Source: Fonticula alba ATCC 38817
Lineage: Eukaryota > Protista > Nucleariida
Length of the DNA: 15,029 bases
Reading direction: 5' to 3' (one strand)
Assembly: GCA_000388065.2 (NCBI GenBank)
Contig: KB932215.1
The notes beneath the pieces were generated by a model. It ran no database searches and was not told the origin of the DNA. It saw nothing but the letters and a program-made list of their open reading frames with translations. The position numbers and the translations under genes are program-made. This document shows positions 10,847 through 14,062 of this stretch, one piece after another (position 1 is the first letter of the stretch; every line of letters starts with the position of its first letter).

Positions 10847-11088
10847 TGCACATGCATGTATTCGCCGAGGCACATGCATTCGCCCCAAAGGGCGCCAAGG
10901 CCAGGCCGGGAGGAGGGGAGAACGCCATCCACCAGCGCCGGGCGACACCAACCAGCAGTGCCGCCACAGGGGGAGTCCCGCAAGGGAGGGCGCGCCGGGG
11001 GGGGAGGGGGGGGGGACAGGGCCGCGCACACACGAAGCCCCGCCCCGGCTCCCTCAGCCCCCTTCGCCGCCAACAGTGATGCCCACTC

Positions 11089-11103
11089 TCACAGGTCGTC
11101 GCG
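11089..11103 (-). other. C-terminal KDEL-like tetrapeptide RDDL followed by stop
   Basis: The minus strand reads CGC GAC GAC CTG TGA. This is not a strict match to PROSITE [KRHQSA][DENQ]EL, but xDDL is a known retrieval variant (Trypanosoma brucei BiP ends MDDL). Confidence 0.6.
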
Positions 11104-13839
11104 CAGGGAGAACGTCCGGGGCGGGGCTTCCGGCGCCTTGGGCAGGCCCGGCTGCGGGGCTTCCAGATTGTCCGGGTCGGCCTGGAGCTGCTCCAGGCGC
11201 TGGCGCAGCAGCTCGGAGTTCACCCGGAGAAGGAGCTGCTCCGCAGATCGCAAGGTGAAAATGGAGTGCTTCACCATCAGCGCATGGTAGAGGTTCAGGT
11301 CATCGCCGACGGCCGCCTCGGCCAGGTCGGTCTCAATGCGATCCAGCGAGGCATACTCGTCATCGAGATCCGCACGGTACCGGGCCTGGCGCGCGCCGAT
11401 GTAGGAAATCAGGCGCTTGACCACGGCGATCTCATTCTCCACGGAGAGCGGGCGGCCGTCCAGCAGGCGCAGCGTCACCGCATGGGCGTACTCCGTGTCG
11501 GTGAGGGTGCGGTCGCGCTCGTCCGGGGTCATCTCCCACAGGCGGAAGTAGGCCATCAGGGCCGGGTCCTCGGTCGGCATGCCGGTCCAGTCGACGGTGA
11601 ACTCCGAGTACTCATTGGTCGTGGAGGACATGCTCTCCAGGAAGTTGTCCGGGAAGAAGTTGAACACCGGGTGCGTGCGGGCGATGTCGGAGACCGACAT
11701 CTTCGGCATGGGGACCACCACGGTGTCGGCGTGGTTCTGAAGATGCGGGAGGATGCGGGGGGATACGGGGGGGGGGGGGGNNNNNNNNNNNNNNNNNNNN
11801 NNNNNNNNNNNNNNNNNNNNNNNNNNNNNNNNNNNNNNNNNNNNNNNNNNNNNNNNNNNNNNNNNNNNNNNNNNNNNNNNGCACGCACAGAGAGACAAAT
11901 ACACAGGTGCACGCACAGAGAGACAAATACACAGATGCACGCGCGAAGAGACAAATGCGCGGGCGCATGCGCAGAGAGACAAATGCGCGGGCGCATGCGC
12001 AGAGAGACAAATGCGCGGGCGCATGCGCACACACGGATGCACACAAGAGGCGCGCAAGACAGGAAAAGGCACATGCAAGACACACACAAGCAAGCACAAG
12101 AGACAGAACAAGAAAAAAGCAACATCTGTCAGACACACCACACAGGAGGCGGACCAACGGGCGAAAGGCAGAAGCCAGCCACGCACATCCGAAAAGGCGG
12201 TCCCAATCTCCGACATGAGCACCGCATTGGAGTTGGGCTTGCCGTAGTTACGGAAGAGCATCGACCCGGCCGGGATGTCCCGCAGCGCACGGCACTCCAA
12301 CGAGGCCACCGCCGCCAGGACATCCGCCAGGCGGCTGTAGCTGTCCGGGTCCCGGGAGGCGTCCGTAGCCAGCGTCAGCGTGCAGGCCACATTCTCCACG
12401 GCCTCCTCCAGGCCATCCTCCGGCTGGTGGTCCGGGTCGGCCAGCGCCTCGCCCGAGGCCGGAAGCTCCGCCCCGGCGAACGGGTTCGAGGGCTGGAAGA
12501 GCTCCGCCAGGGGGGCCATGAACTTCAGGAGCTGCGCGTCCTCCAGCGGCGAGCGCGACAGGTCAAACTCGAAGAGGTAGTTCCACTGGACCGACAGGGC
12601 CCAGCGGAAGGCATCCCGAGTGAAGAGCTCCGGCTCGATGACTGCAGCACGACAAGAGGCGATGAGGCCCGGTGAGCGAGAGGCAAAAGGCAGAGGAGGG
12701 GACCGGGGAGGCGCAGACGCAACCCCCGGGGGCGAGAGGGGCTGGGCCTGTCGGCGTGCACATGCGTGGCGGGAGAGGCAACAAAGATGAAGAGAGAGGG
12801 GGGGGGGGGAGGGGAACACACCAACCGGCCGGCCGCTGGCCTTGCGCGTCTCCAGGGCCTGGCGGATCTCGGCGAAGTTCTCCGAGATGTGCTTCTCCCG
12901 CGAAAAGAAGTAGTACCAGGCGTCGGTGCCGGTCAGATCGGCCGCCTCCTCAGCCTCGAAGTAGATCGGCGTCCGGAAGATCTCCGGCAGCGAGTGCAGG
13001 AAGTGATACCTGCGGCCGGACCGCATCGGGGCAAGCATGGGCATAGAAGGGGGCGGGGGGGGCGGGGCGCCCAAGAACATGCACTGCTGTCAGCAAACCA
13101 GCGCCGGCGGGAAGGGGCAGACCCCAGGGCGCGGGGTGCCCCGGCAGGCGAAGGAGAGGCAGCATGGCCAGACGCACCACTTGGAGGAGGGGTCGCTGCG
13201 CTGCTGGATGAGGAAGATGGCCACCTGGTCGGTCAGGGTCAGCCGGTGCTCCGGGGTCAGCTTGATGCCGGCCACGAGACTCGGCTCGAAGATGAGCAGC
13301 GCGTCGGCCGGCACGCGCAACAGCAGGGCATCCGCCTGGGGGGGGGGGTGGAGATCCGGAGGGAGGGACAGCGGCCAGGAGGCACGCGCGCGGAGTTATA
13401 GCAGGTCAGCAACCGGAGACTGATGCCCCCTCCGCCAGCGGGCGGAGGGAGGGAGGCAGACCCGACCGCGGGAGCCACGCACCGGGATGTCCCGACGAGA
13501 GGCCAGCGAAATGCCGCCAATGCCGCCCGGGCCGTGGACGTGCAGCGACACATCCGGCCCGAAGAAGGACCGGGCATCCTTGCCATCGTCGGAGACCGAG
13601 GCCGGCGACAGGGATCCCACCCGGACGCCGGACGCTTGCAGCCAGTCGAAGTAGCCCGACAGCCGGAGGAAGCGCCGCTCGACGTCCGCCGACGGCGAGG
13701 CCGAGAAGCCCATCTCCCGCCCGGTGGGGGCCGTGGAGTTGCCGGGCGCGGCGGAGTCCAGCGCCAGCCCGGGCGCGGCGCTCAGCAGGGTGGCCGCCAG
13801 CAAGGCCAGCAGGGCCAAGACCAGCGCGGGAATCCTCAT
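11089..13839 (-). CDS. Secretory-pathway SET-domain protein of the Rubisco LSMT/SETD3 type (SET + LSMT substrate-binding-like domain), probable pseudo-methyltransferase
   Basis: Exons on the minus strand: 13839-13483, 13335-13178, 13009-12822, 12641-12187, 11736-11089, totalling 1806 nt (601 aa + TGA). Start context is GCCACGATG. LSMT-family landmarks appear in order: YFDWLQASGV, GGISLASRRDIP..LLLRVP..ALL, AIFLIQQR..SSKWYHFLHSLP..TPIYF, FTRDAFRWA, MAPLAELF, RALRDIPAG..FRNYG..SN, DNHADTV, LMAYFRL, VENEIAVVKRL. Confidence 0.85.
11781..11880. other. Assembly gap (100 N) inside the last intron of the SET gene
   Basis: N run flanked by poly-G on the left and a minisatellite on the right; true length unknown. 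Confidence 0.98.
11881..12028 (+). repeat. 28-bp minisatellite (GCAYGCRCAGAGAGACAAATRCRCRGGY-like, at least 5 copies)
   Basis: Units start at 11881, 11909, 11937, 11965 and 11993; the array may continue into the gap. Confidence 0.9.
13762..13839 (-). other. Predicted N-terminal signal peptide of the SET-domain protein
   Basis: MRIPALVLALLALLAATLLSAAPGLA has a basic n-region, a long Leu/Ala h-region and a small-residue c-region. Likely cleavage is near A21/A22 or A26. It is followed by an N-S-T sequon at residue 34. Confidence 0.8.
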
Positions 13840-14062
13840 CGTGGCGGGGGATATTCCAGGCGAGGGGAGAACGGGGCGTGGCACGAAAAAGAAGCGGAGA
13901 GGGGGGAGGGGAGGGGAAAGGTGTTGTCGGGGAGGGAAGCGAAGGGCCGTGTCCTGTGCAGGCCCGGCGGCCTCCCCGGAGGGGGGGATATCTTTTTTGC
14001 CGGGCGGCCTCCCCCCCCCCCGCAAACATCCGCGAAAGAGAAACAAACACGGCTGGGGGGGA

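What the first reader, a model, noticed from the sequence alone, without database searches (positions are those of the whole stretch)
11089..13839. A SET-domain protein addressed to the ER lumen (signal peptide + sequon + RDDL)
Seen: an LSMT/SETD3-like SET fold preceded by a strong hydrophobic leader and an NST sequon, ending in RDDL-stop, with no other obvious transmembrane segment. Knowledge: characterised members of this family (Rubisco LSMT, SETD3, SETD4, SETD6, yeast Rkm/Efm proteins) are cytosolic, nuclear or plastid enzymes, and KDEL-type tetrapeptides retrieve soluble lumenal proteins. Inference: a soluble ER-resident SET protein, pointing either to lumenal protein methylation or to a SET fold repurposed for client binding. 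I know of no characterised example, but cannot exclude similar unannotated proteins in other protists.
Basis: partly seen in the sequence, partly recalled or inferred. Interest (0 to 1): 0.8.

Follow-up and report, generated by a model that had tools for sequence, protein, structure and literature searches.

The report
ER-addressed SET-domain protein family
This amoeba gene encodes a methyltransferase-shaped (SET-domain) protein with a secretory entry signal and a KDEL-like "return to the ER" tail; relatives in several other protist groups carry the same two tags, pointing to an unstudied family of SET proteins that sit inside the ER rather than in cytosol, nucleus or plastid.

Summary
A five-exon gene on the minus strand (13839-11089) encodes a 601-aa protein identical to Fonticula alba H696_05903. 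Spliced RNA contigs from four runs confirm all four introns, the first AUG and the RDDL-stop end. The N gap (11781-11880) lies inside intron 4 and is spliced out. The protein has the SETD3/LSMT fold plus a Rubisco-LSMT substrate-binding domain. Its only hydrophobic segment is an N-terminal signal-peptide-like leader, and a disordered tail ends in RDDL. The single NST sequon is no more than chance.

The main support is comparative. The protein sits in a clade separate from SETD3, where most members have signal peptides. Nine of 23 end in x[DE]L, against 5 of 78 elsewhere. Its four nearest relatives end in HAEL, HKEL, RDEI and KVEL.

Clade members keep the AdoMet-contacting Arg, Asn, Tyr and Phe. 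Fonticula has replaced three of the four, so it is probably a poor cofactor binder.

No characterised ER-lumenal SET protein turned up in the literature or among reviewed structures.

Localisation, signal-peptide cleavage, the ER tails of Fonticula's own residents and enzyme activity remain untested. I rate it a new variant of a known kind, interest about 0.6.

The parts
13840..13949 (-). 5' leader of the mRNA, without any ATG
   Evidence: RNA contigs reach 13941-13949 in three runs. No ATG in any frame.
13762..13839 (-). Start codon and signal-peptide-like leader (aa 1-26: n-region MR, h-region 3-19, c-region SAAPGLA). Cleavage after A26 is a guess from the -3/-1 rule.
   Evidence: Hydropathy 2.46 over 19 residues and the only such segment in the protein. 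A at -3 of the AUG. Aligned with the leaders of clade members.
13732..13740 (-). Single N-x-S/T sequon (N34-S-T) in the disordered stretch after the leader
   Evidence: About 2 are expected by chance, so it is not evidence for lumenal residence.
13483..13839 (-). Exon 1 (aa 1-119): leader, disordered linker, first helix and start of the SET core (GGIGGISLASRRDIP)
13178..13335 (-). Exon 2
   Evidence: Joints confirmed by RNA contigs.
12822..13009 (-). Exon 3 (iSET helices)
   Evidence: Aligns to SETD3 residues 107-250.
12187..12641 (-). Exon 4: second half of the SET core. It holds the degenerate NH motif (FQPS, 12498-12487), a 59-aa low-confidence insert (12486-12310), the Cys pair C321/C351 and the retained Tyr367 (12246-12244).
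11737..12186 (-). Intron 4. It holds the assembly gap (11781-11880), a 28-nt tandem repeat array (11881-12029) and a G-rich 10-nt repeat (11742-11772).
   Evidence: Spliced out in all four runs with no letters between the two sides. Repeats.
11089..11736 (-). Exon 5: Rubisco-LSMT substrate-binding domain (aa 431-524, 11604-11323), long terminal helix, disordered Pro-rich tail (aa 573-601), RDDL (11103-11092) and TGA (11091-11089)

Best explanation
[quoted passage not shown] It is kept there as a soluble resident because its flexible tail ends in RDDL, a KDEL-type signal that the ERD2/KDEL receptor would use to return it from the Golgi.

It is the Fonticula member of a previously uncharacterised clade of SETD3/LSMT-class SET-domain proteins that is addressed to the secretory pathway. 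The clade is found in nucleariids, Capsaspora, Amoebozoa, Diphylleia and other protists. Most members keep the AdoMet-contacting side chains and are probably lumenal protein methyltransferases.

The Fonticula copy has replaced three of those four residues and carries a 59-residue insert next to the cofactor site. It more likely binds a lumenal client without methylating it, or methylates it only weakly.

Shown here: the gene model, the start and the end, the fold, the single hydrophobic leader, the clade-wide recurrence of both signals, and the residue substitutions.

Inferred: translocation, cleavage, retrieval by ERD2, loss of activity, and any substrate.
For: Gene model and termini:
- Transcript-confirmed model, first AUG and RDDL-stop.

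Fold:
- SETD3/LSMT class.

Targeting features:
- The N-terminal segment is the only hydrophobic one.
- In the AlphaFold model the leader helix (5-20) is followed by a disordered stretch (20-53), and the tail from about residue 573 is unstructured, with pLDDT below 50 from 584.

Clade:
- Two trees place P0001 in the same 23-row group, apart from the SETD3 clade (FastTree support 95, SH-aLRT 94).
- 14 of the 23 rows have signal-peptide-like leaders; none of the 28 SETD3-clade rows does.
- 9 of 23 end in x[DE]L against 5 of 78 elsewhere, Fisher p = 4e-4.
- In the inner 5-row group (SH-aLRT 94) all end KDEL-like although their tails do not align: RDDL in Fonticula, HAEL in Capsaspora, HKEL in Parvularia, RDEI in Lithocolla, and KVEL in a protein of unknown origin.

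Precedent for the tetrapeptides:
- In human cells position -3 accepts any residue but Pro, HAEL binds ERD21 as well as KDEL does, and KVEL, REDL, RTDL and QEDL are natural ER signals (PMC2140024).
- T. brucei BiP uses MDDL, and removing it causes secretion.

Cofactor site, in SETD3 numbering from PMC6400499:
- The clade keeps R254, N278, Y313 and F327.
- Fonticula has Y256, Q284, Y367 and T382, and P285 in place of His279.
Against: - No signal-peptide predictor was available. The 17-19-residue hydrophobic core is long enough to act as an uncleaved signal anchor.
- RDDL fails PROSITE [KRHQSA]-[DENQ]-E-L, and AKDDL gave only partial ER localisation in human cells.
- The C-termini of Fonticula's own BiP, PDI and calreticulin, and its ERD2, could not be fetched, so whether this organism uses xDDL is unknown.
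- Dictyostelid orthologues have signal peptides but no KDEL-like end, so ER residence is not universal in the clade.
- The Parvularia sequence as predicted has no hydrophobic leader. Its N-terminus is doubtful, since its isoforms differ at residues 46-54.
- His279 contacts AdoMet through its main chain and the catalytic Tyr is kept, so residual activity cannot be excluded.
- All evidence is computational.
Confidence: 0.6

Rival explanations
1. The protein enters the secretory pathway but is not an ER resident. RDDL would be too weak, or not read at all, and the protein is secreted or lives in a post-ER compartment, for example in the Golgi-derived matrix that Fonticula secretes to build its stalk.
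For: Asp at -2 is a poor signal in human cells. Dictyostelid orthologues have signal peptides but no KDEL-like ends, so the clade need not be ER-retained.
Against: All five members of the closest subgroup end in [RHK]-x-[DE]-[LI] on otherwise unalignable tails, which argues for selection on the tetrapeptide. xxDL and MDDL signals work in nature.
Confidence: 0.2
2. The leader is an uncleaved signal anchor. The protein would be a type II membrane protein with the SET fold in the lumen, retrieved through its lumenal C-terminal RDDL in the way yeast Sec20 and Sed4 use HDEL (own knowledge).
For: The hydrophobic stretch spans 17-19 residues with mean hydropathy 2.46. The model shows a 16-residue helix there. 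An unverified scan note reports a Fonticula Sec12 with a lumenal HAEL tail.
Against: A Pro-Gly plus small-residue c-region (SAAPGLA) follows the core, as in cleaved signals. Clade members have shorter, classical signal peptides.
Confidence: 0.1
3. The protein is cytosolic or nuclear like other SETD3/LSMT-class proteins. The leader would not work as a signal, or a downstream start (M43, context GAGATGG) would be used, and RDDL would be a chance ending.
For: About one protein in 1,000 ends KDEL-like by chance (my estimate). M43 has a good initiation context. All characterised relatives are non-secretory.
Against: M1 is the first AUG of a leader with no ATG and has A at -3. No shorter 5' end appears in four runs. 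Both signals recur in relatives. M43 lies in an unconserved, disordered stretch.
Confidence: 0.06
4. The Fonticula protein is still an active lumenal methyltransferase. The changed cofactor residues would reflect a remodelled but working AdoMet site.
For: The catalytic Tyr367 is kept. His279 of SETD3 binds AdoMet through its main chain only. The His is variable across the whole clade, while the rest of the site is conserved in the other members. Methylation on the lumenal side has a precedent in METTL9 acting on ER-facing loops of SLC39A7.
Against: Arg254, Asn278 and Phe327 equivalents are all replaced only in Fonticula, and N278A severely impairs SETD3. Pfam's SET model does not match P0001, while it is recorded for several relatives. 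The branch is long (1.4-1.5 changes per column).
Confidence: 0.3

Closest known systems
SETD3 (actin histidine-73 N-methyltransferase)
   Same: It is the best sequence and structure match (E = 1e-17; Foldseek E = 1e-18). Both have a SET core, an iSET helical insert and a C-terminal LSMT-type substrate-binding domain, and the catalytic Tyr313 equivalent is kept.
   Different: SETD3 is cytosolic, with no leader and no KDEL-like end. The Fonticula protein lies outside the SETD3 clade. It lacks the Arg254, Asn278, His279 and Phe327 equivalents and the His-specificity residue Asn256, which is Phe258 here. It also has a 59-residue insert after the NH position.
Rubisco LSMT and plant LSMT-like enzymes (Pfam PF09273 family)
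   Same: It has the Rubis-subs-bind domain above the Pfam cut-off and the same two-lobed fold.
   Different: The plant enzymes are plastid enzymes with transit peptides and an intact NH motif. Fonticula has no plastid, and its leader is a hydrophobic secretory signal.
KDEL/HDEL-type soluble ER residents (BiP, PDI, calreticulin; variants ERp57 QEDL, GPX7 REDL, MANF RTDL, T. brucei BiP MDDL)
   Same: A signal peptide, no other membrane segment, and an acidic x-D-[DE]-L terminus on a flexible tail.
   Different: No known resident of this class has a SET fold. RDDL fails the strict PROSITE motif, and its use in Fonticula is untested.
METTL9 (seven-beta-strand histidine methyltransferase)
   Same: It is a precedent for protein methylation on the lumenal side of the ER, on the ER-facing His-rich loops of SLC39A7.
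   Different: It has an unrelated fold and no KDEL-type signal is described for it. This is a functional analogy only.
Catalytically silent family members kept in place for binding: SUMF2/pFGE (ER, PGEL) and the SET-fold subunit of the plastid-encoded RNA polymerase
   Same: SUMF2/pFGE is an ER protein with a non-PROSITE KDEL variant. That it is an inactive FGE paralogue is my own knowledge. LSMT-like chains sit as subunits in PEP structures (ranks 31-37). That this chain is PAP7/pTAC14 and is not known to methylate there is also my own knowledge.
   Different: These are different folds or compartments. They serve only as precedents for a repurposed enzyme fold.

Membership tests
SETD3/LSMT-class SET-domain proteins | C-terminal Rubisco-LSMT substrate-binding domain (PF09273) | tested here: met
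   28.3 bits against a cut-off of 21.6, residues 431-524. 31.4 bits on exon 5 alone.
SETD3/LSMT-class SET-domain proteins | SET core plus iSET fold superposable on SETD3, LSMT and SETD6 | tested here: met
   AlphaFold model with pLDDT 72 and pTM 0.72. Foldseek against PDB: SETD3 3.5e-18, LSMT 5e-16, SETD6 3e-11, probability 1.0. Swiss-Prot models give the same.
SETD3/LSMT-class SET-domain proteins | AdoMet-binding residues: the NH motif (Asn278-His279), Arg254 and Phe327 | tested here: not met
   The aligned residues are Q284-P285, Y256 and T382, while 14 clade relatives keep N, mostly R and mostly F/Y. Residue roles are taken from PMC6400499. Pfam SET (PF00856) gives no match.
SETD3/LSMT-class SET-domain proteins | Catalytic tyrosine (Tyr313 of SETD3) | tested here: met
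   Y367 is aligned, in the motif FRNYG.
SETD3/LSMT-class SET-domain proteins | Methyltransferase activity | not testable with these tools
   Needs recombinant protein, AdoMet binding and a methylation assay.
SETD3 orthologues (actin His73 methyltransferases) | Placement inside the SETD3 clade and presence of the His-specificity residue Asn256 | tested here: not met
   The SETD3 clade is well supported and excludes P0001. The aligned residue is F258.
Soluble ER residents retrieved by the KDEL receptor | N-terminal signal peptide at the true start of translation | tested here: met
   First AUG of a transcript-confirmed leader with no ATG. Positive n-region, strongly hydrophobic core and a small-residue c-region. 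This is a heuristic only: no SignalP was run and cleavage is untested.
Soluble ER residents retrieved by the KDEL receptor | No further membrane-spanning segment | tested here: met
   The highest 19-residue hydropathy outside the leader is 1.49.
Soluble ER residents retrieved by the KDEL receptor | C-terminal tetrapeptide matching PROSITE [KRHQSA]-[DENQ]-E-L | tested here: not met
   RDDL has D at -2. AKDDL gives partial ER localisation in human cells, and REDL, RTDL, QEDL and T. brucei MDDL are natural functional variants.
Soluble ER residents retrieved by the KDEL receptor | The terminal signal is conserved among orthologues | tested here: met
   The closest subgroup ends in RDDL, HAEL, HKEL, RDEI and KVEL. 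9 of 23 clade rows end in x[DE]L against 5 of 78 others, p = 4e-4.
Soluble ER residents retrieved by the KDEL receptor | The organism's ERD2 accepts this ending; its BiP, PDI and calreticulin use like endings | not tested
   No tool here could fetch other Fonticula proteins without a query sequence. The scan's notes held nothing on them.
Soluble ER residents retrieved by the KDEL receptor | ER localisation that depends on the tetrapeptide | not testable with these tools
   Needs tagging with and without RDDL.

The most novel reading that the evidence does not exclude
An old, widespread clade of SET-domain methyltransferases works inside the ER lumen or secretory pathway of many protists: nucleariids, filastereans, Amoebozoa, CRuMs and others. 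This would imply an AdoMet supply to the lumen and a set of lumenal lysine- or histidine-methylated proteins that nobody has looked for. In this reading Fonticula's copy has since lost cofactor binding and become a lumenal client-binding pseudoenzyme.
Probability: 0.35. Interest if true: 0.8.

Novelty: new variant of a known kind. Interest (0 to 1): 0.6.

Why it matters
SET-domain enzymes are known as cytosolic, nuclear and plastid protein methyltransferases. A conserved branch carrying a signal peptide and KDEL-type ends would put this chemistry, or at least this substrate-gripping fold, inside the ER.

That raises two questions that can be tested: how AdoMet reaches the lumen, and which secretory or chaperone proteins are methylated there.

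The clade offers a natural comparison between members with an intact cofactor site (Capsaspora, Clastostelium, Diphylleia and dictyostelids, some of which I understand to be genetically tractable) and a degenerate one (Fonticula).

It also gives a real-world set of non-canonical retrieval tetrapeptides (RDDL, HAEL, HKEL, KVEL, RDEI) in little-studied eukaryotes.

Tried and rejected
Rejected readings:
- Bipartite plastid-targeting signal of a secondary alga. The organism is Fonticula alba, a plastid-less relative of fungi.
- An exon hidden in the assembly gap, or a frame break across it. The mRNA contigs join 12187 to 11736 directly, and homologues align through the junction.
- An upstream or alternative start, or an alternative last exon. 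There is no ATG in the leader, no other joints, and all four runs agree.
- The NST sequon as evidence. It is at chance level.
- Membership of SETD3 proper.

Searches that led nowhere:
- A word-indexed search with exon 5, and one with a 19-sequence clade profile, each returned only the protein itself.
- The NCBIfam scan gave nothing.
- Looking for Fonticula's ER residents or KDEL-type notes in the scan's notebook gave nothing usable beyond an unverified 'Sec12 ends in HAEL' note.
- Literature searches for an ER-lumenal or signal-peptide-bearing SET-domain protein found none. The T. brucei lumenal proximity-proteome preprint mentions no SET domain or methyltransferase in its main text.
- A first maximum-likelihood run on 91 rows did not finish. 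It was repeated on 53 rows.

Full report
**1. What is in the sequence**

The finding's span is the coding span of one minus-strand gene. I built a five-exon model by hand: 13839-13483, 13335-13178, 13009-12822, 12641-12187 and 11736-11089. All introns are GT..AG with GTGCGT/GTGTGT donors, and the product is 601 aa. A database search returned an identical 601-aa protein, Fonticula alba H696_05903, annotated 'hypothetical protein / Rubisco LSMT substrate-binding domain-containing'. The genomic neighbours are unrelated: Rab3GAP catalytic subunit, a faint ThiF-like match, and listerin.

**2. The assembly gap and the transcript**

Four public runs from two samples hold about 65% of the stretch's sampled words, which matches the exon fraction. 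Laid on the window, each gives one contig of about 1.95-2.1 kb that skips exactly the four predicted introns.

The joint 12187|11736 skips 450 bases, including the N run at 11781-11880, with no extra letters. The gap is therefore inside intron 4, so its true length does not matter to the protein. It is flanked by a 28-nt tandem array on one side and a G-rich 10-nt repeat on the other, which probably explains the gap.

Homologues align straight across the exon 4/5 junction. The transcript leader reaches about 13949 and has no ATG in any frame. The first AUG has A at -3. There is no splice downstream of exon 5, so RDDL-TGA is the real end.

**3. Fold**

- Pfam finds the Rubisco-LSMT substrate-binding domain above its cut-off, at residues 431-524.
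- The closest solved relatives by sequence are SETD3 (1e-17), LSMT (2e-5) and SETD6.
- An AlphaFold model built on a 19-sequence clade alignment has pLDDT 72 and pTM 0.72. It shows a folded body from about residue 49 to 572, preceded by a lone helix (5-20) and a disordered stretch (20-53). The tail after the last helix is unstructured, with pLDDT below 50 from residue 584.
- Foldseek matches SETD3, LSMT and SETD6 with probability 1.0.
- Among reviewed proteins, all matches are cytosolic, nuclear or plastid enzymes: SETD3, LSMT, the aldolase methyltransferase, SDG40, set10, SETD6 and SETD4.

**4. The two address labels in the Fonticula protein**

The leader is MRIPALVLALLALLAATLLSAAPGLA. It has a positive n-region, a 17-residue hydrophobic core and a Pro-Gly/small-residue c-region. 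It is the only hydrophobic segment: hydropathy is 2.46 over 19 residues, and nothing elsewhere exceeds 1.5. No signal-peptide predictor was available, and the core is long enough that an uncleaved signal anchor cannot be excluded. Either way the body and the C-terminus would face the lumen.

The single sequon (N34-S-T) is at or below the chance expectation of about 2, so it is not evidence.

RDDL departs from PROSITE [KRHQSA]-[DENQ]-E-L at position -2. A systematic screen in human cells (PMC2140024) found the following:
- E is strongly preferred at -2, and AKDDL gives only partial ER localisation.
- REDL (GPX7), RTDL (MANF), QEDL (ERp57) and KEDL are carried by real ER proteins.
- Position -3 accepts any residue except proline.
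- HAEL binds ERD21 as well as KDEL does.
- KVEL is ERp27's signal.

T. brucei BiP is retained by MDDL and is secreted without it. RDDL is therefore a plausible, possibly weak, retrieval signal. Whether Fonticula's receptor reads it could not be tested.

**5. Relatives: the decisive part**

An exhaustive phmmer scan of 1.84 billion representatives found 159 relatives, the nearest at only 28% identity. Many have signal-peptide-like leaders, and several end in KDEL-like tetrapeptides.

Two trees agree: FastTree on 101 full-length rows and IQ-TREE on 53 rows.
- P0001 lies in a 23-row group (support 95 and 94) separate from the well-supported SETD3 clade.
- 14 of the 23 rows have leaders; none of the 28 SETD3-clade rows does.
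- 9 of 23 end in x[DE]L against 5 of 78 elsewhere, Fisher p = 4e-4.

Inside that group, a five-row subgroup (SH-aLRT 94) unites these proteins:

| Protein | Last four residues |
|---|---|
| Fonticula alba H696_05903 | RDDL |
| Capsaspora CAOG_04380 | HAEL |
| Parvularia atlantis | HKEL |
| Lithocolla globosa | RDEI |
| Unnamed environmental protein | KVEL |

Four of the five have clear leaders. The Parvularia N-terminus is doubtful, because its two isoforms differ at 6 of 9 positions around residue 50, which looks like a frameshift. Their tails differ in length and do not align, yet each ends KDEL-like, which argues for selection on the tetrapeptide.

Other members:
- Clastostelium (KQEL), Diphylleia (REEL) and Stenamoeba (KDIL)
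- Pellita, Clydonella and Ancoracysta
- Dictyostelids, which have classical signal peptides but no KDEL-like end

A second leader-bearing group includes a KDEL-ended protein and Aphanomyces H257_15895.

None of these carries an informative name. Literature searches found no ER-lumenal or signal-peptide-bearing SET protein.

**6. Is it an enzyme?**

I used the SETD3 cofactor contacts described in PMC6400499:
- Arg254, Asn278 (N278A is severely impaired) and Phe327 contact the cofactor through their side chains.
- His279 contacts it through its main chain.
- Tyr313 bonds to the adenine C8.

I then read the aligned residues. The 14 clade relatives keep Asn in all, Arg in 13, Tyr in 13 and Phe/Tyr in 11, while the His is variable. 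Fonticula alone has Tyr256, Gln284, Pro285 and Thr382, and keeps only Tyr367. It also has a 59-residue low-confidence insert right after the NH position, and its DYGF motif is EIGT. Pfam's SET model does not match it.

My reading is that the family looks like working methyltransferases and the Fonticula copy looks like a poor cofactor binder. This agrees with a separate first-stage note on this window. I put residual activity at about 0.3.

Methylation on the lumenal side has a precedent in METTL9, an enzyme of unrelated fold, acting on the ER-facing loops of SLC39A7.

**7. A possible extra sign of a lumenal life**

The protein's only two cysteines are C321, in the motif NVAC, and C351, in LEC. 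They sit on the two strands of one hairpin. Both positions are cysteine in all five members of the closest subgroup (motifs NVxC or NLxC, and xC), and in several of them these are the only cysteines of the mature protein. SETD3 has only the second. A disulfide would fit an oxidising compartment, but I could not measure the geometry.

**8. Verdict**

Most likely (0.6), this is a soluble ER-lumenal resident belonging to an unstudied secretory branch of the SETD3/LSMT class, and in Fonticula it has probably been repurposed from catalysis to binding.

The rivals are:
- a secreted or post-ER protein (0.2)
- a type II membrane protein with a lumenal body (0.1)
- a cytosolic protein with chance labels (about 0.06)

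It is a new variant of a known kind. Its interest rests on the family-level pattern rather than on this one gene.

Noticed in passing
window 11742-11772 and 11881-12029 (intron 4): The assembly gap is bracketed by a G-rich 10-nt repeat (3 copies) and a 28-nt tandem array (5.3 copies, 90% matches). These probably caused the gap. A 58-nt low-depth RNA contig matches the array (11947-12004), which may be unspliced pre-mRNA or a copy elsewhere.
   Followed up: partly
window 12384-12382 and 12294-12292 (C321, C351): The protein's only two cysteines lie on the two strands of one hairpin and are conserved as a pair in the five closest relatives (P0001-P0005). SETD3 has only the second. This is a candidate lumenal disulfide. 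MAFFT misaligned the first one by four columns, but the motif (NVxC or NLxC) is plain by eye.
   Followed up: partly
P0168-P0172, P0103, P0125, P0075 (dictyostelid orthologues): All have classical signal peptides but end in poly-Asn or other non-KDEL tails. In dictyostelids the same family may therefore be secreted or retained by other means. Cavenderia's copy is longer (643 aa), and an extra Pfam family (PF09478) is recorded for it.
   Followed up: no
P0002 and P0151 (Parvularia atlantis transcript ORFs): The two isoforms are identical except for 6 differences within residues 46-54, and the N-terminal 45 residues are Arg/Pro/Ser-rich rather than hydrophobic. This looks like a frameshift in a GC-rich transcript assembly that hides the true N-terminus.
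   Followed up: no
P0009/P0152, P0037, P0045 (Aphanomyces astaci H257_15895), P0070, P0126: A second, separate group of LSMT-like SET proteins has signal peptides. P0009 ends in KDEL and keeps the NH motif, but has Arg in place of the catalytic Tyr (VSRG where SETD3 has IFYG).
   Followed up: no
window about 10863-11088: In one run the transcript contig runs about 150-180 bases further 3' than in the other three (past 10900, against 11012-11044). That brings it toward the convergent ThiF-like neighbour, whose CDS ends about 374 bases from this gene's stop. The 3' UTRs may overlap.
   Followed up: no
same genome, another piece (scan note s1-066130): An unverified first-stage note says Fonticula's Sec12 has a lumenal tail ending in HAEL, the same tetrapeptide that ends the Capsaspora orthologue of this SET protein. 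It is worth checking as a hint to what this lineage's KDEL receptor accepts.
   Followed up: no
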